NCBI GenBank assembly: GCA_000708835.1
Contig: DF237695.1
Span: 1-37,526, forward strand
Direction: 5' to 3'
DNA: 37,526 bases
Origin: Klebsormidium nitens
Taxonomy: Eukaryota; Plantae; Klebsormidiophyceae
This document shows positions 1 through 8,193 of the stretch, piece by piece; within the stretch, counting starts at the first letter, position 1, and each line of letters opens with the position of its first letter. The notes below the pieces were generated by a model. That model saw nothing but the letters and a program-made list of their open reading frames with translations, ran no database searches and had not been told where the DNA came from. Made by a program: the position numbers and the translations under genes.

Positions 1-343
1 TTATACTCAGTATGGTCCAAACATCATGACTTATGATCGACAATGCATACGGCAATATGAGGTTTCCCTCATAATATCGAGAGACTGGGTTGGGGTTTCA
101 GGTGTGAGGTTGAACATATTCGCAACATAGTAACGTGGTCGAGGCTATATATTCTCGTGCAAGCGCGCGCCTCGCGCTGGAGCAACCCGCGGCCGCTTAA
201 GCAGGCCGGCAAAGCCCTGGCGCAGTGCGTGCGGTTGGTCGGTGCCAACCAGCAGTTCCTCTCTTCCTCCGGGTTTTCGGTAGTGATTTAACCCTAAACT
301 CGCAGGTGGCACTACTGTGGGTGGTCGCACCGATTTGAGTTTT

Positions 344-801
344 TGTGTCAACATATGAAAAAGGCAGCGTGTATCTGAAAAGTGAGGTTATGGAAGCTGG
401 TTCGAGGGGTTATAACATCTGATCGAGCTGTTTTGAAGTCGAGCTACCCGTTTCGTGGGTTGTTCTTTGTGCAACATCATTCCAAAGTAAGGATCGTATG
501 TCCAAGGAATCTAAAGCCTGCTCGGAATCATGTCGGAAAAACGAGGTAATTTCGAAGAGCGTTTATGATAACGCTTATTATCATAACCTAAACCTAAAGG
601 GTTTTGACGGCCAGATGTAAGGTGAGGGGAGGAAAAGGTGAATTTGGGATATCGCACTATTGGGGATGGATATTCCAGGGGAAGAATCTGCCCCCCTGGA
701 GGGCGGTTTTCATTGCTCGATTATCCTCAACCGGCCCCCCTGGAGGTCTGTTTTTTTCACGGAGTTCAGTGCACCTCTGCAAATGTGTTTTGACACGATG
801 C
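344..801. mobile_element. Probable degenerate non-autonomous TIR element (MITE-like), same family as 6414-7070
   Basis: 765-801 matches the reverse complement of 6414-6450 at 32/37 nt. A degraded left-end match lies at ~344-380 (gtgtcaacatatg...gcagcgtgtatctgaaa). No transposase ORF and no clear TSD. Confidence 0.4.
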
Positions 802-1112
802 CCAAAGATGGTTTCTTTCGGTATAGCCCAGAGGGAGCCCTGAGAGGGCAAAGCAAAAGTGTACATGTGATTGGACGGTTAAGATAAGGTTCGGAGTACA
901 AATGCACGCCTGGAGCCTGATTGCTGAGCTCGCACCGATAATGCAGTACCGTAGTCTACAGACTACCTACTACCGGTCGGAGTCGAGAGTCAGGACCACA
1001 TGCCCCGCGCAATGCGGACGGTTTGTTTGAAGGGTAATTGCTCGGCGCTCTCCGAGGCTCCACCTGGCACGCACGTCGATTGTTCGTCATTTTTATGTGG
1101 TCACCCGGACCG

Positions 1113-1135
1113 CACTGACACTGACACTGACACTG
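1113..1135 (+). repeat. (CACTGA)n hexamer microsatellite, ~3.8 units
   Basis: cactgacactgacactgacactg seen directly. Confidence 0.9.
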
Positions 1136-1325
1136 TTGTGAGCACTCCCGCTGTCGACAAGGGAGGACGGACGGTCTGGTCGTTCCGCTTGAGCGTGGCT
1201 GGCCCCTACTACTAGCTTACCACCACGAGACCAGCACTGTGCACACATCTCTGAACTTCAAAATTTGAAGGAGATTTCAAGAAACAAGCCAGCAGCTGGG
1301 CGGGTTCCTCTTTGGTTTATACACA

Positions 1326-4300
1326 ATGGCGTCTAATGCCAGCTTTGCGAAGTGGGCTGTTTTAATGCTGCTGTTAGCTAGCTTTGGAGGGGCGGCAGCG
1401 TTCAGCGTTAGCTATCTGCAGGGATGCGACAAGTCCAACAACATAACCCAGCTTTGGCTGAACAGCTCGCGCCTTAGTGGGCCTATTCCCCCTGAGATTG
1501 GCAAATGCACGGCGCTGCAGTCTCTCAGCCTGCGCAGCAATTTCAATTTGAATGGGTCCATTCCCCCAGAGATCGGCCAGCTGTCAAATCTGGTAACACT
1601 GGATTTGGGAAGCACCGGTCTCTCTGGGCCCATCCCAAAGGAAGTTGGCGATCTGGCTAGCCTCCAAACACTCAATGTGGCTTCCAGCCCTTTCTCGGGA
1701 CCCGTGCCATGGGACGCCCTGTGCGGTTTACCAAACCTTTCTTCGCTCTGGTTGAACTTCACTTATGTTGAGGGGCCCATCTCAGCGGGTATTGGCAAGT
1801 GTGCAGCACTACAAGGGCTCAGCTTGCGTGGCAGCTCTAAGGTGAACGGTTCCATTCCCAAGGAGATCGGCCAATTGACCAACCTGACAATTCTTGATTT
1901 GGGTAGCACGAACCTGACTGGGCCTATCCCGGGAGAGATAGGCGGGCTCGTTAGTCTTGGCTTGCTAAAGCTGGGTAACAGTAACTTCACTGCCCCAGTG
2001 CCCTGGGAAAGCTTGTGCCAGATGTCAAAGATTACTTTCCTGGATCTTGGCGGCAACTCAGAGCTCACTGGCCCATCGCCCCCTCCCTGTTTTTGAAACT
2101 TGACCGGGTTGCAAAACCTGTTGTTAAGCAACAGCCCAGTCTTCAATGGGACGGCGCTCCCTGTAGAGGTTTGCCAGTTGGTTAAGCTGCAAGTAGCGTA
2201 TATGGGTTCCACTAACTTGACGGGTGTGATTCCCGCTTGCGTGGGCAGCATTTCTGGGCTCCAAGAGTTGGCCCTGTTTAGTAACGCTTTAGTTGGGGGG
2301 ATCCCTCCCGAGCTTGGGTTGCTGCGTAACCTCTCTCTTCTGAGGCTTCGAGACAACCAGCTGACAGGAAACCTCCCTGAAGGGCTCAAGGGGTTATCTC
2401 AGCTAACCACATTGGACCTCAAAAACAACAATCTAAACGGCCCGCTGCCTGCTGAGGTGTTTGCGAACCTCCGTCAACTTGAAGAGTTGGACCTATCCAA
2501 CAACACTTTTACGGGGCCTATTCCCACCGAGATCGGCGCCAGCGGAGAAAACCTAACCGAGCTTGACCTAGCCCACAACAGCCTAAACGGAGTTATCCCC
2601 CCCGGTCTCGGTAATCTGGCCAACCTTACCCACCTTGACCTCAGTTACAACCGGCTGTCGGGGGCGCTTCCAGCTGAGCTGCGAGGCCTTCGACCGTCTA
2701 AACTGGAAGCAATCTATCTCTCCTTCAACAATTTGACCGGTGACGTCGCTCCAATCGGCCACCTTACCGGCCTGTCGGATATAACCCTCAACAACAACAA
2801 CTTCAGCGGGCCTATTCCCACTGGGTGGTTCAACAGTACCCAGCTCCAGGTTTCAAACCTCGCCTTCAACAGCTTCTCCGGACCCGTTCCCTTGGGGATT
2901 CGCAACATGGCACCCCCCGATCTCAGTGCCGTGCTGGCTTTGTTCTTTGCCGGGGCGCCCGCCTTTGTGCTCAGCATACTGGAGGAGGTTGCGGGGTCAA
3001 TCTTTATCGGGCTCAATTCCAACCGACTCTCCGGCAGCTTTCCGGACATCGGACGGCCAAACTACACTGCAGCGATCAACGTGTCCGACAACAATTTTTC
3101 GGGGACGTTTCGTGCAGGGCCCTTCAAGAAGAAGAATGTCACCGCGAGCTTCTTAGAGCTCATCAATAACGGCCCCCTGGACCTGATTCCCGGGTACAAC
3201 CTCAGCGGCTTGGAGCTGGTTTCCCTACCCAATATCTCCGGAACTGGTGCCCCCCTAATTGCGCCCCAAATGCGCGCGTTAAACGTAGCCGGCCGAGGGA
3301 TCCCCCCGACCGCCAAACTGGACCTGAGGCGAGTTCCTGCCACGTGCCCTTACGTCTCTTACGCCCAGCCTGAGGGTGGCGTCATCACTGACATCACTTT
3401 TTGGGACGCGTGCGAGAAATCTTTCGGATGCGTAGTGAACCTGATCGGGACCCGGGCCAAGCTGAGCCGCGCGACCCGGGAGAAGATCTGCCTCAGCAAG
3501 ATCTCGGTGTTTCTGGCGGGCGATTCGCCGGGCGTCCGGTTCTCGGTGGGGGGACCGGGTTCCGCGTTTCTGAACAACAGTCAGGGCAGCGTTTACTTCA
3601 ACGACTCTGCCTTTGTCGACCACCTCGATTTGGGCCCCGGGGGCGTTGCTTACACCGGCGTCGGCTTTGCGCGCGTGCAAGAAGGGAACCTGTGCCGGAA
3701 CGAGGGGGCCTCGGGAGTGGTGGGCATAACCTATGGCGTCTTCGCAGCGCTTATCCTGGTCAGCGCAGCCGCGTGGTGGGCTGTCCGTGCGACAGGTGTC
3801 CTCCAAAATATGGGCGGCAAGCCGACGCGGCCGCGCCTCGCGGCCGCGTTTGGCGTGGGGGCCTACCTCTGGGGCATCATCAGCGTTTTCCTGGCCTGGG
3901 CCGATCTCGTTTCGGACGTTTTGGTGGTTGTGGAGATCTGGCGGGTTTGGTCTACCTGGGTTGTTCTAACCTCGATCCTTGCACCGTTCGTGCTGAGTGC
4001 GTTGTGTGCTGGGCGCGTCCTTCTGGAGGACTCCAACCGCTGGTCGCCTTTCAAGGTGAGGAAGTTTTCACATCTCGTCAGAAGTTTTGCGGACGGTTCA
4101 ACGGTTTGGCACTTGGTTGTCCGCATACGTGTACGGCCTGCTGTGGGTCAAACAGAAAGTTCCCAGCGTAGGAGTTTAGTGTTGGACTAGGCAGTCAGAC
4201 ACGGTCGCTCAGGCTTCGAGGACCAATCAACTGCCGGAAGCACTTATGAGTGAAACTCTGTACAAGGGCCGGAAGTAACGGAAGTAGGTACTTCTGGAAG

Positions 4301-5456
4301 ACCTCCGTTTTTCGTTGGGGAGACATTTTCCTGTTTCCTCGAACTTATTTCCTGTTGGTCCGACTTTCTTTGGACGGCTGAATGGTTTACCACAAGCCTT
4401 GCCCTGTGGAAGGAAACAGAAGTGGTAGCCCAGGCTGTGTCCTATGGCTTCAGACGAAGCTGGCGCCTTCATCAGTGGAACTTTGACGCGTCCTGGGCAT
4501 TGTAGTACCAGTCTCTATAGAATCTGTCACTTTGGAAAGGTGCTTGCGAGTTGAATGTTTTGATTCAGAAGACCGTTTTAGGACCTAAAACTGAGACTTC
4601 GTGAGCAGCTTTGCCAGTGCGGACCGTGTGATCTTTCAAGCAAATCGTTTTGAGCTGTGACTAGACGAAGTATTTTCTTCGGTTCATGGTTTTCTTGGCG
4701 CAGCCGGAGTGCTTTGGGTTTTGCATCCAGGACTTTAGTCATGCGACCAAAGGTCAGGGCTTTTTGGTGTGAAAATTCAGAAGCGGGCCGTGAAGCTTCG
4801 CCGTCGAACCTGATAGACTTAACACCGCCAGATTGGAAACCCATCAGAAACGAGAAATCGTTTACCATGCCAAGGCGCCAGTTGGACTCAAGAACACTTA
4901 CTACTTCGACTTACAGGCTCGCCTCAAATGGATCCCTTTTTACAAGCTCCCCGAGCCGTCCGGTCCGCCGCCTCTGGGCGCCCTCCCTTGGTGGAAATAT
5001 GGCCTTATCCCGATCACACTTCCCGCCACCTTTGCTTACGTCATCGTTCTGGACTGCCTCGACCTGGTCGACAAAATCGGCGGTCACCTGCGGTTCGGCT
5101 TCGACGTTTACTCCCTCCACCACTATTCCCAGTTCCGGTCGCAACTGGACCTGGTATTGCGGTCGGTACCGCAAGCGGTCTTCCAGACCGCGCTCTACCT
5201 GCTGGGCAGCTCGCGCGCCACGCGCATTTACATCGACGAGCAGATTCTCCTGCGGTCTATCCTGCTGTCGCTGCTGAACGTACTGGTACAGTTCAATTTT
5301 CTCGTGCACGAGTGCCTCGTGACGCGCATCCCGGTGTGGTTAATCCTCCAGAGGCGCTTCGCCTCGCGCAACTGCCGCGCGACGCGCCTGCCCGATGCGG
5401 CCGCGGGCGACGAGGAGGCCAACGACAAGCTTTCGGAGAAGGTCGGCGAGCTGTAG
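1326..5456 (+). CDS. LRR receptor-like multi-pass membrane protein (signal peptide + plant-type LRRs + ~6 TM helices); exons 1326-4055 and 4917-5456; in-frame TGA at 2094-2096, so possibly a recent pseudogene
   Basis: ORFs 1326-2096 and 2100-4190 share a frame and read ...GPSPPPCF*NLTGLQNLL... across the stop. N-terminus is hydrophobic (WAVLMLLLASFGGAAA). Many LxxLxxLxLxxNxLxGxIP repeats. Donor AAG|GTGAG at 4055/4056 and acceptor TTACAG|GCT at 4916/4917 are both phase 0, joining RWSPFK|ARLKWIP. 1089 codons if the TGA is read through. Confidence 0.85.
4056..4916 (+). other. GT-AG intron (861 nt) of the LRR gene
   Basis: Consensus donor and acceptor, phase-compatible, and the TM-domain sequence continues across it. 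An extra internal exon cannot be excluded. Confidence 0.75.
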
Positions 5457-6413
5457 ACTTCAGGGCTCAACCCGAGGCCCCGGCCGTTCGTTTGCAGTGA
5501 TTTATACGTCATAGCGGACAGATTCAAAAGCAGCGATAGTGCCTGAACGGAACGTTTAAGTGCCAGTGCACCCGGGGTGGAGACAAGCAACAAAAAAAGC
5601 TACATATATATAAATGCAGACTATGCTGACTGAAGGAATTGCGTGCCGGAGAGGTCTCCTCACGAATGCTGCCGGCATGGCTTCTTTCAAGGTAGCCAAT
5701 GTCGTCTTGACCGTATTCTTCTCCATTCACGTCATTTATTGTGAACCTGCATTGAAACAGTCGAGCACGGGCCAACGGTTTCGATCCTGTTGACCTGCAT
5801 GGAGGGCCACGAAATAAAGTCTGCGCCACGAACTGTATCTATTGACGCCAACATGCATCACGGGGAGGTGACCGTCGGCATATGCATGGATGAGGCGCAC
5901 CATCTGCTTGAGCGACACGTGCGCAACAAGATACTACTCGATTGTACGAGTACGCGGCGCCCCGAAATTGGTTATAAAGAGGATTGCTTTTCAGAATCTA
6001 GTCAATGCCCCGTGCTTACATACACATGGCAAGTAACGTCACACAAAACAATATACCTACAAGCGGCTGCAAGCTGGCTGAGATGCACATGCAATTACGC
6101 GTGCATGCTTCAGGCCTCGCATCATAAACGTGACAAGTGATTAGTGCCGGCATCTCAGAGTACGTCAGGCTTACGTAAATCACACGCAATCCTGGGCAAG
6201 TGCAATGTTCTGAATCGCGTGATCTCAGACAACATTCGAGCGAAATTTAGAAAACGGTAAGAGGCCAAGATTATCTTAACGTTCTCGGCAGTACCCTAGT
6301 TGATGGACGTCGCGACCAGCTTCTGTTGCTAACGACGAGAGAACCGATCACAATGTTCGTTAGAGAGAAAACGAGATTAAGCATGGGTTTCAAAAAAACT
6401 TGACGGGCCATAT

Positions 6414-7070
6414 GCATCATGTCAAAACATATGTGCAGTGGTGTACTGAAAGAACTTCGGAAACAAAACCGGCTTCCTGCATGGGGGAGGTGGCTTAATG
6501 ATTGAGTATTCAGAACGGGCTTCGAGGGGGGGGGTGATTCGCCAGCAGAAAACAGCCACCACTAGACATAAACAACCCACCGACCTCCGTTCCCACCCCT
6601 TGGCATGGCAATTTCATCTCGAACCCGCTGCCTGGCCGTATCTCGTGTATGAAAGCGAGAATAACAGCTTGCCAAAAAGCTGCCAAAATGCTGCCAAATG
6701 CAAAGTGCTTTCTAGATACGACTAATTTGTCAATCTCAGTTCGCTGCGGATATTCGGACTTCGTTTCGTTTTCGAAGCCTCTGAAGGATGCTCTTTTGAC
6801 CGAAGAACACCAGCCTTAGTAAGACATAAGGGCTTGGTTCGACCTTGACGTATGGCCAAGATCTGTGGTGTCCAAAAGGCTTCACGTCACCTTGGTTAAA
6901 TCCGGCCTCCCTAGCCCCACCCCCCGTAAGAGTCATAGGGTAAAAAAGCAGAACAGGCTTCCATACCCCCCCAAACGAACCCCAAAATTGCTCAAAATCG
7001 GCCTCCATGGCCCCCTCGAAAACCTGAAAGCCGGTGTTCAGTACACCACTGGAAAAGTGTTTGACACGAT
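6414..7070. mobile_element. MITE-like element (~660 bp) bounded by ~35-bp terminal inverted repeats
   Basis: 6416-6450 and 7037-7070 are inverted repeats (29/35 nt, including a perfect 15-mer ttcagtacaccactg). Interior is non-coding with G/C runs. A TA dinucleotide lies just outside both ends, but the TSD is uncertain. Confidence 0.6.
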
Positions 7071-7229
7071 TAATACGTACCTTCTCAGCTGTTGGCACAT
7101 CGCTGAGTTTTGCAAGCGAACCGCTCGCCTCAAACACATGGGTTGTAGCACGAGAGCTTCACGTTCTGCATATATATAGCTGTCCTCTCTTCAACAGCCT
7201 AACTAGGCAGTCAACAATACGCTACGGAG

Positions 7230-8193
7230 CTAAGCGTCTAAGCCGAGCGTCAAAAGGGCGTCAACTCTTCCCACAGCCTGGCCTTCGGCGAAATGGTCTC
7301 CCGGGAACTGGACCCGGAGACGGCCCCGCGACGAGAAACAGGTCGTTGCCGGCACGTCTGTTGTCCCACTGGATCTGACTTCAAATGAATTGACAACAAG
7401 AAAGTCCCCAAACCAGAGTTGAACGTCGGCGCCTGGGTTCTCGACTCTTGATACCTGGCACAATCCGAAAGACTGAATGGCGACTTTCTCAACATTAAGC
7501 GCCCCGATAATAATCTGACCGCCTGGACTGGTCGCTGGTCCACCCCAAAAACTTTCCCACGCGATCCCGAAAGCGTCACGCAACTTATGAACCGGAAAGA
7601 GTGGCTGAAGCTGCAGCAGGCTGACGTCAGGATCTAGGTTGGGATTCGCCGTGAGGCCCGTCGTGATGTGCTCGTCACGAACCCCCCAGAACACTAGCCG
7701 TCCATGCAGCCAAACAAACGTCAGCATGACGTCACTGCAGCAACAGGAGTCAAAATGAGTGCTGCGGTCCTCTCCACCCCGGGAATCCAGCTCAGCCCGC
7801 TGAATTTGTTCACCCCCGCTGTTTTTGAAACGCCGGAACTGGGTACAAACTGCTTGGAAAACGCGACGCATTAATCTGGTCTCAATCTTTGGCGCACAGT
7901 TTCGTTTCAGTGCTCGATAATACATCATGATTACCAGCTTCCTGTACCCACACAGCTCCTCTACCGTTGCATCTAGCTTTGCACTTTCATCTGGGCAGCA
8001 CTCTTCAAGCACTGCCACCCCTTCCTTTCCATTTGCCGGCCCGCAGAACGCTTCCCTCCAAATGTTGGGGTGCTGGGCGGCCGCGCAATGGACGGGCGCC
8101 TACAGCATACGTGGCGCGTATCAAAGAAGGCGGGTCCTGCCATGCCAGCTTCCGAAGGATGACCAGTATGACGTCAGCGGGAAGCCCCTCCAT
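7230..8193 (-). pseudogene. F-box-like gene A (minus member of pair 1), single +1 frameshift near 8100
   Basis: MEGLPADVILVILRKLAWQDP (8193) shifts frame at GTA-G-GCG (8103-8097) into APVHCAAAQHPNIWREAFCG...ESAKLDATVEELCGY...GRLVFWG, colinear with intact gene B. Confidence 0.85.

What the first reader, a model, noticed from the sequence alone, without database searches (positions are those of the whole stretch)
3700..5456. LRR ectodomain fused to an XK-like multi-pass membrane domain instead of a kinase
Seen: after splicing, the LRRs are followed by about six hydrophobic segments, including LAWADLVSDVLVV and VLRSVPQAVFQTALY, and a short cytosolic tail with no kinase motifs. Established: plant LRR-RLKs and RLPs are single-pass. 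XK-related proteins (XK, XKR8, CED-8 scramblases) carry a D..xD motif in an early helix and an ES.PQ..LQ motif. Inference: the two motifs resemble those of the XK family, which suggests a ligand-sensing LRR directly coupled to a scramblase- or channel-like module, a receptor architecture I do not recognise from land plants. The conserved Glu is Arg here.
Basis: partly seen in the sequence, partly recalled or inferred. Interest (0 to 1): 0.72.

Follow-up and report, generated by a model that had tools for sequence, protein, structure and literature searches.

The report
LRR receptor fused to half-scramblase module
A gene of the streptophyte alga Klebsormidium nitens joins a plant-type leucine-rich-repeat receptor ectodomain to a membrane module resembling the first half of animal XK-related lipid scramblases instead of a kinase. 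I found no paper describing this design, and this particular copy carries a premature stop codon.

Summary
The window is Klebsormidium nitens. Transcript contigs from two studies confirm the splice 4055|4917, and the annotated protein P0001 uses the same junction.

After the LRRs come one membrane helix (TM0), then four membrane helices and a hydrophobic hairpin, then a 43-residue tail. No kinase domain is present.

The XK idea is supported, but only for half of the fold:
- Pfam does not hit this protein. Two divergent family members hit PF09815 below threshold (E 2e-4 and 3e-3), collinear with profile positions 3-190 of 337.
- 24 of the 30 nearest named ESM-Atlas clusters carry PF09815.

The Xkr acidic residues are conserved as D568 and D572. 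The third position is Arg here and Glu in 13 of 31 relatives.

The family has 53 representatives. Every named one is Klebsormidium, 19 of 31 have LRRs and none has a kinase. First-stage notes of this scan flag the same architecture on five other pieces of this genome.

Caveat: an in-frame TGA at 2094-2096 (TGG in a relative), also present in transcripts, cuts off the signal peptide and first LRRs. Scrambling activity is untested.

The parts
1326..2093 (+). First part of the coding region: signal peptide (MASNASFAKWAVLMLLLASFGGAAA) and about ten plant-type LRRs
   Evidence: ORF. Pfam LRR_14, LRR_1, LRR_8 with E down to 1e-21. Covered by the same transcript contigs as the rest of the gene.
2094..2096 (+). 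In-frame TGA inside an LRR (…PPPCF*NLTGL…), a premature stop
   Evidence: Unchanged in RNA-derived contigs of runs X1, X5, X6 and X9. The related environmental locus L003 has TGG (Trp) at this codon in an uninterrupted ORF. No SECIS or other Rfam match in 1-7300.
2100..3353 (+). Further LRRs with a low-confidence helical, hydrophobic island at about 2913-3014. The annotated protein P0001 starts at the ATG at 2202.
   Evidence: Pfam LRR families. Full-length model pLDDT 88.8, island residues 241-264 at pLDDT 51-59. Foldseek matches MIK2, FLS2, RGFR1 and BRI1 ectodomains at E 1e-18 to 1e-13.
3354..3707 (+). Membrane-proximal extracellular module with conserved Cys residues. It is family-specific (…LGPxGxxYTGVxFxxVQxGNLCGNPxA…) and has no Pfam family.
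   Evidence: Consensus of alignments A1 and A2. Beta-rich and confident in the model. No Pfam hit.
3708..3791 (+). TM0: single membrane helix linking the ectodomain to the cytosolic side (P0001 503-530)
   Evidence: Hydropathy. Helix 9-36 of the domain model and 503-530 of the full model. It is followed by a K/R-rich loop.
3831..3935 (+). TM1 of the Xkr-ND-like module, with D568-x-x-S-D572 at 3903-3917
   Evidence: D568 is kept in 23/28 and D572 in 22/27 relatives. By motif spacing and by the collinear Pfam and structural matches, these are read as equivalent to hXkr8 D26/D30 and hXkr4 D125/D129 (PMC12334663). No residue-level alignment was available.
3951..4028 (+). TM2 of the ND-like module
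   Evidence: Helix 584-609
4056..4916 (+). Intron: GT..AG, 861 nt, phase 0, between TM2 and the hairpin region
   Evidence: The joint is seen in contigs of X1, X5 and X6. The intron sits at the same position in relative L003. No Rfam match.
4989..5078 (+). Hydrophobic helical hairpin (P0001 643-672), at the position of the partly inserted helix IH1 of Xkr proteins
   Evidence: Model helices 149-157 and 159-178. The Xkr architecture is described in PMC8298096. The equivalence is inferred from order and position.
5118..5204 (+). TM3 of the ND-like module, with R700-S-V-P703-Q at 5160-5174
   Evidence: Position 700 is Arg in 15 and Glu in 13 of 31 relatives. P703 is kept in 31/32 and Q708 in 30/32. 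Read as equivalent to hXkr4 E313…P316 and hXkr8 E141 (PMC12334663), an equivalence inferred from motif spacing.
5238..5324 (+). TM4 of the ND-like module
   Evidence: Helix 726-754
5325..5456 (+). Short basic-then-acidic cytosolic tail (43 aa) and stop codon. No kinase and no second Xkr repeat.

Best explanation
The gene belongs to a small family that, among labelled sequences, occurs only in Klebsormidium.

Domain order:
1. A signal peptide.
2. A long plant-type LRR ectodomain with an island.
3. A conserved Cys-containing membrane-proximal module.
4. One membrane helix (TM0).
5. A module of four membrane helices plus a hydrophobic hairpin.
6. A short cytosolic tail.

Shown or well supported: the membrane module is a distant homologue of the N-terminal repeat (ND) of XK-related (Xkr) scramblases. 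There is no kinase and no second Xkr repeat.

Topology (inferred, and consistent with Xkr): ectodomain outside, the loop after TM0 inside, TM1 running from inside to outside, tail inside.

Mechanism (inferred, about 25-30% likely):
- Ligand binding brings two LRR ectodomains together.
- Two half-modules then pair side by side in parallel, as ND and CD do in Xkr proteins.
- The buried charged cluster (D568, D572, Glu or Arg 700) then acts on the bilayer, through local thinning or lipid scrambling, or on a cation.
- This would be a receptor that signals through the membrane rather than by phosphorylation.

In this copy and about half the family the Xkr glutamate is an arginine. It could pair with the two aspartates, so these members may be locked or regulatory variants.

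This locus in the sequenced strain:
- A TGG-to-TGA change at 2094-2096 separates the signal peptide and first LRRs from the rest, although the mRNA is still made and correctly spliced.
- The full receptor is therefore probably not produced here. It is a young nonsense allele or expressed pseudogene (about 65%).
- Intact paralogues such as GAQ78274 and GAQ93027 carry the architecture.
For: Identity and gene model:
- P0001 is 100% identical to the window's product and is named as K. nitens.
- Splice and transcript continuity are shown by contigs from two studies.

Family:
- 53 representatives at E<=1e-3 among 1.84 billion proteins.
- Every named one is K. nitens or K. subtile.
- 19 of 31 full-length members carry LRRs. 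No kinase family appears among the hits.

Link to Xkr:
- PF09815 hits in P0032 (E 2.3e-4, residues 61-260 against profile 3-174 of 337) and P0041 (E 2.7e-3, 64-272 against 4-190). PF09815 gives the strongest non-LRR hit to the membrane module, and it recurs in two members.
- AlphaFold2 model with pLDDT 89.7 and pTM 0.85.
- ESM features on residues 540-765: first hit 0.90 with 200 shared features, and 24 of 30 nearest named clusters carry PF09815.

Motifs and architecture:
- Motif conservation is given.
- The Xkr papers describe ND and CD repeats of four TM helices plus a partly inserted helix, with conserved acidic residues on TM1 and TM3 (PMC8298096).
- D125N, D129N and E313Q lower hXkr4 scrambling (PMC12334663).

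Stop codon.

Ectodomain: Foldseek matches MIK2, FLS2 and RGFR1 at E about 1e-18.
Against: - P0001 itself has no Pfam hit even at E<=10.
- The family profile finds no Xkr chain in the PDB by sequence.
- Foldseek gives XKR8 only E 1.7, at rank 50.
- The Atlas shape search returned noise.
- Half of the Xkr fold is missing, so no Xkr activity can be assumed.
- hXkr4 works as a monomer with both repeats (PMC12334663), and nothing here shows dimerisation.
- Arg at the Glu position reverses a charge that matters for scrambling.
- The premature stop means this copy may do nothing.
Confidence: 0.78

Rival explanations
1. The membrane module is a lineage-specific multi-pass anchor or oligomerisation platform. 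It only looks like the Xkr N-terminal repeat through convergent helix packing and short chance motifs, and is not homologous to it.
Against: - collinear PF09815 hits in two members;
- 24 of 30 nearest named Atlas clusters carry PF09815;
- the conserved D-x-x-x-D and [E/R]-S-x-P fall at the spacing of the functional Xkr residues (PMC12334663).
Confidence: 0.1
2. The module is homologous to the Xkr ND but does not act on lipids. It serves as a docking or partner-binding membrane domain, for example recruiting a separate effector or co-receptor. This would make the proteins elaborate receptor-like proteins.
For: - Half of the Xkr fold is absent.
- About half the family replaces the Glu needed for scrambling by Arg.
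- Purified Xkr8 and Xkr9 showed no scrambling in proteoliposomes, as cited in PMC12334663.
- Xkr8 needs a single-pass partner, basigin (PMC8500837).
Against: The buried charged residues and the P-Q…Q motif are strongly conserved across a divergent family. This argues for more than a passive anchor. There is no direct evidence either way.
Confidence: 0.35
3. The TGA at 2094-2096 is read through, for example by near-cognate tRNA-Trp, or is a strain-limited variant. Under this reading the locus still yields the full receptor with its signal peptide.
For: - The rest of the 3.2-kb reading frame is intact.
- The mRNA is abundant enough to assemble and is correctly spliced.
- The ancestral codon appears to be TGG.
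Against: - The stop is present in all contigs laid, from several studies.
- No SECIS or other RNA element was found.
- The following base context (TGA A) is not, to my knowledge, a known read-through context.
- The official annotation starts the protein after the stop.
Confidence: 0.15

Closest known systems
XK-related (Xkr) scramblases: XKR8, XKR9, XKR4, CED-8, XK (Pfam PF09815)
   Same: - The fold of the N-terminal repeat is shared: TM1, TM2, partly inserted helix, TM3, TM4.
- The inferred orientation in the membrane is the same.
- D-x-x-x-D on TM1 and [E]-S/T-x-P-Q on TM3 fall at the spacing of the Xkr charged residues.
(PMC8298096, PMC12334663.)
   Different: - Only one of the two repeats is present.
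- There is an extra N-terminal membrane helix and a large LRR ectodomain.
- There is no caspase-regulated C-terminal tail.
- Glu is replaced by Arg in this gene.
- The protein falls below Pfam's threshold.
- The host is a streptophyte alga rather than an animal.
Plant LRR receptor kinases and receptor-like proteins (MIK2, FLS2, RGFR1, HAESA, BRI1; LRR-RLPs)
   Same: Signal peptide, plant-type 24-residue LRR solenoid with an island, and a membrane-proximal Cys pair. Foldseek E 1e-18 to 1e-13.
   Different: No kinase domain. The protein is not single-pass: five membrane helices plus a hairpin replace one helix and a tail.
Xkr8-basigin (or neuroplastin) complex
   Same: It combines a single-pass type-I protein bearing an ectodomain with an Xkr membrane body (PMC8500837). 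The alga has an ectodomain, TM0 and an Xkr-like module in one chain.
   Different: - The animal case is non-covalent.
- Basigin has Ig domains and contacts helix alpha-9 of the C-terminal repeat, which is absent here.
- Basigin acts as a chaperone for surface delivery, not as a known ligand sensor.
Short XK-related-like proteins of about 195-270 aa in ESM-Atlas clusters (labels Mollusca, Euglenozoa, Foraminifera, Mucoromycota)
   Same: They are the nearest neighbours by language-model features. Part of their members carry PF09815, and their size fits a single repeat.
   Different: They have no LRR ectodomain. The relationship rests on embedding similarity only, and I could not align them.

Membership tests
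XK-related protein family (Pfam PF09815) | Sequence match to the family profile at or above the gathering score (24.8 bits) | tested here: not met
   P0001 and its exons: no hit at E<=10. Best family members: 20.7 and 17.2 bits.
XK-related protein family (Pfam PF09815) | Two structurally related repeats (ND and CD), each with four TM helices and a partly inserted helix (PMC8298096) | tested here: not met
   Only profile positions 3-190 of 337 and XKR9 residues 2-189 are matched. After TM4 only a 43-residue tail remains.
XK-related protein family (Pfam PF09815) | Fold of the N-terminal repeat | tested here: met
XK-related protein family (Pfam PF09815) | Conserved acidic residues on TM1 (D, D) and TM3 (E, followed by P): hXkr8 D26, D30, E141 and hXkr4 D125, D129, E313, P316 | tested here: inconclusive
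   D568, D572 and P703 are present. Position 700 is Arg in this gene and Glu in 13 of 31 relatives. Residue equivalence is inferred from motif spacing, not from a printed alignment.
XK-related protein family (Pfam PF09815) | Phospholipid scrambling activity | not testable with these tools
   Needs a proteoliposome or cell assay.
Plant LRR receptor-like kinase | Cytoplasmic protein kinase domain | tested here: not met
   No kinase family among the Pfam hits of P0001 or of the 31 relatives.
Plant LRR receptor-like protein (RLP) | Single membrane helix and short cytoplasmic tail | tested here: not met
   Five membrane helices plus a hydrophobic hairpin in confident models.
Plant LRR receptor ectodomain | Signal peptide and plant-type LRR solenoid | tested here: met
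   Pfam LRR families. Foldseek matches to MIK2, FLS2 and RGFR1. The signal-peptide-like N-terminus at 1326 is separated from the rest by the TGA.

The most novel reading that the evidence does not exclude
These proteins are ligand-gated half-scramblases. Binding of an extracellular ligand would dimerise the LRR ectodomains and assemble two single Xkr repeats into a two-repeat unit that thins or scrambles the plasma membrane. That would be the first receptor-scramblase fusion. It would also be a living single-repeat form of the Xkr fold, showing how the two-repeat animal scramblases arose by duplication.
Probability: 0.15. Interest if true: 0.88.

Novelty: new variant of a known kind. Interest (0 to 1): 0.62.

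Why it matters
Land-plant surface receptors signal through kinases or kinase-bearing partners. A receptor ectodomain wired directly to a scramblase-like membrane module would be a different way of passing a signal across a membrane. It occurs in a lineage close to the origin of land plants.

It also extends the XK-related fold, studied mainly in animals for apoptosis and McLeod syndrome, into streptophyte algae in a single-repeat form. That bears on how the two-repeat Xkr fold evolved, and on whether one repeat with its charged cluster is enough to act on a bilayer.

The family is small, has intact paralogues and is easy to test in proteoliposomes.

Tried and rejected
- Pfam and NCBIfam on each exon and on the annotated C-terminal region gave no family.
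- phmmer and the family profile against PDB sequences gave only chance matches, NDUFV1 and BMX kinase at E about 1.
- Foldseek against the PDB gave nothing at E<=0.001. XKR8 appeared only at rank 50, though with the best probability and TM-score in the list.
- The ESM-Atlas shape search with my model, and the Atlas's own low-confidence model, returned unrelated bacterial proteins.
- The word-based search with the family alignment found only seven close relatives and no Xkr protein.
- I considered a tiny intron that would remove the TGA (GT at 2089 to AG at 2139, 51 nt). I rejected it because the transcript contigs are colinear with the genome there and it would delete 17 residues of an LRR.
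- I considered selenocysteine and rejected it: there is no SECIS and the relative has Trp.
- The hydrophobic stretch at 2913-3014 is not a membrane helix. It is a low-confidence island within the solenoid.
- The joint 3451 to 5180 has 27-letter sides and comes from contigs of paralogues, so it is not a splice.
- Literature searches found no paper linking XK-related proteins with Klebsormidium or with LRR receptors.
For the spliced product I used the database protein P0001 by reference.
Full report
**What is there**

The window is a contig of Klebsormidium nitens. A word search with the membrane part of the ORF returned a 797-aa NCBI/UniProt protein, P0001. It is 100% identical to the window's product, sits on a contig of exactly the window's length, and is named 'LRR receptor-like serine/threonine-protein kinase FLS2 [Klebsormidium nitens]'.

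The gene runs on the + strand:
- An ATG at 1326 opens a signal-peptide-like N-terminus followed by plant-type LRRs.
- The frame continues to 4055.
- A GT..AG intron of 861 nt, phase 0, spans 4056-4916.
- The last exon, 4917-5456, ends in a stop codon.

**The splice is real**

I laid contigs of four public runs on 1300-5600.
- Runs X5 and X6 (one study) each have a single contig of about 3.08 kb. It covers 1300-4053 and continues at 4915-5220 without any difference.
- Run X1 (another study) has the same joint at depth about 100, plus an unspliced contig at depth 11.
- The tool places the cut two bases to the right as equally good, which gives 4055|4917. This is the junction used in P0001 (…SPFK|ARLKW…).
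- The runs are not on record as RNA. The dominant intron-less form with GT..AG ends shows that they are.
- A related environmental locus (L003, 49-70% amino-acid identity) has an intron at the same position.

- ORF 1326-2093 and ORF 2100-4055 are in the same frame and are separated only by TGA at 2094-2096. The TGA lies inside a regular LRR (…PPPCF*NLTGLQNLLLSN…).
- The TGA is present unchanged in all the contigs laid, so no intron removes it and it is not an assembly error of the window.
- L003 has TGG (Trp) at that codon in an uninterrupted ORF that begins with a signal peptide.
- No SECIS or other Rfam family is found in 1-7300.
- The annotated protein therefore begins at the Met at 2202 and lacks a signal peptide.
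- The most likely reading is a recent TGG-to-TGA nonsense change in an otherwise intact, still transcribed gene. Read-through cannot be excluded.

**The membrane part**

AlphaFold2 on the C-terminal 303 residues, with 36 aligned relatives, gave pLDDT 89.7 and pTM 0.85. The full 797-aa protein gave pLDDT 88.8.

Both models show, in P0001 numbering:
- TM0 at 503-530, then a short K/R-rich loop;
- TM1 at 544-578;
- TM2 at 584-609;
- a beta-hairpin and a hydrophobic helical hairpin at 643-672;
- TM3 at 686-714;
- TM4 at 726-754;
- a 43-residue tail.

No kinase family is found in this protein or in 31 relatives. The hydrophobic stretch inside the LRR region (residues 241-264) is a low-confidence island of the solenoid, not a membrane helix. 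The ectodomain resembles MIK2, FLS2, RGFR1, ERL, HAESA and BRI1 ectodomains at Foldseek E 1e-18 to 1e-13.

**Is it XK-like?**

Direct sequence tests on this protein fail:
- No Pfam or NCBIfam hit on either exon or on the joined region of P0001.
- No Xkr chain by phmmer or by the family profile against PDB sequences.
- Foldseek puts XKR8 only at rank 50 with E 1.7, although with the best probability (0.28) and TM-score in the list.

1. An exhaustive HMMER search found 53 relatives. Two of the more divergent ones hit PF09815 XK-related at E 2.3e-4 (20.7 bits) and 2.7e-3 (17.2 bits). These are below the 24.8-bit cut-off but collinear: protein 61-260 and 64-272 against profile positions 3-174 and 4-190 of 337. 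PF09815 gives the strongest non-LRR hit to the membrane module, and it recurs in two members.
4. Language-model features of residues 540-765 gave a first hit of 0.90 with 200 shared features to a cluster carrying PF09815. 24 of the 30 nearest named clusters carry that family (weaker).

**Only half of the fold**

XKR9 consists of two related repeats, ND and CD. Each has four membrane helices and a helix partly inserted in the inner leaflet (PMC8298096). The Pfam and structural matches cover only the ND. After TM4 the algal protein ends.

The ND carries the hallmark acidic cluster on TM1 and TM3 (PMC8298096). In hXkr4 these are D125, D129 and E313, next to P316. They are equivalent to hXkr8 D26, D30 and E141, and D125N, D129N and E313Q lower scrambling (PMC12334663).

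In the algal family the same spacing is conserved:
- D568 in 23/28 and D572 in 22/27 relatives;
- [R or E]700-S-x-P703 with P in 31/32;
- Q704 in 27/31 and Q708 in 30/32.

Position 700 is Arg in 15 and Glu in 13 of 31. The states are clustered on a poorly resolved tree, and the two deepest members (P0041, P0042) are D-D-E as in Xkr.

**Family and distribution**

- 53 representatives at E<=1e-3, 36 at E<=1e-10.
- Named members are K. nitens (GAQ78110, 78274, 78170, 93027, 84842, 79501, 80901) and a K. subtile transcript. The rest are unlabelled metagenome or SRA-assembly contigs.
- 19 of 31 full-length members have LRRs.
- Several, such as P0017, P0041 and P0044, start with signal-peptide-like sequences, so intact versions of the architecture exist.
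- First-stage notes of this scan record the same reading on five other pieces of this genome. I did not check those windows.
- I found no paper that describes this architecture.

**How it may work**

The topology places the module as in Xkr proteins: start and end in the cytosol. Because each repeat has an even number of helices, two copies could pair in parallel as ND and CD do.

My working model, an inference at roughly 25-30%, is that ligand-driven pairing of ectodomains assembles two half-modules. Their buried charges would then act on the bilayer or on a cation. The Arg variants may form an internal salt bridge and behave differently.

The main functional rival is a non-catalytic docking domain. 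In this locus the premature stop probably prevents any of this.

**Limits**

The spliced product was used only as the stored database protein P0001.
- No residue-level structural alignment was available, so residue equivalences rest on motif spacing and on collinear Pfam and structure ranges.

Noticed in passing
window 2094-2096: In-frame TGA inside an LRR splits the receptor ORF. It is present in transcript contigs. A related environmental locus has TGG (Trp) there. The annotated protein starts downstream, without a signal peptide.
   Followed up: yes
window 3354-3707: Membrane-proximal extracellular module of about 115 aa, with conserved Cys residues and a G-N-L-C-G-N-P motif just before TM0. 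It is conserved across the family, is beta-rich in the model and has no Pfam family.
   Followed up: partly
window 2913-3014: Hydrophobic, helical, low-confidence island (P0001 241-264) interrupting the LRR solenoid. Hydropathy alone would call it a membrane helix.
   Followed up: partly
window 4027-4944: Run X1 holds an intron-retaining contig at depth about 11 beside the spliced form at about 100. Runs X5 and X6 show only the spliced form.
   Followed up: no
L003 4185-8667: Ortholog-like gene on a soil or environmental metagenome contig. The prokaryotic gene caller split it into three ORFs. It has an extra intron (about 5496-6015) that the window's gene lacks, and the same intron before the last exon.
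   Followed up: partly
ESM Atlas clusters: The nearest named clusters are short proteins of 195-270 aa from diverse eukaryotes, partly annotated XK-related. This hints that free single-repeat XK-like proteins exist outside animals.
   Followed up: no
window 3451 and 5180 (table 5): A 'joint' skipping 1728 bases with CC..GT ends and 27-letter sides, in contigs that otherwise differ from the window. It most likely reflects paralogue contigs matching two conserved stretches, not a splice.
   Followed up: no
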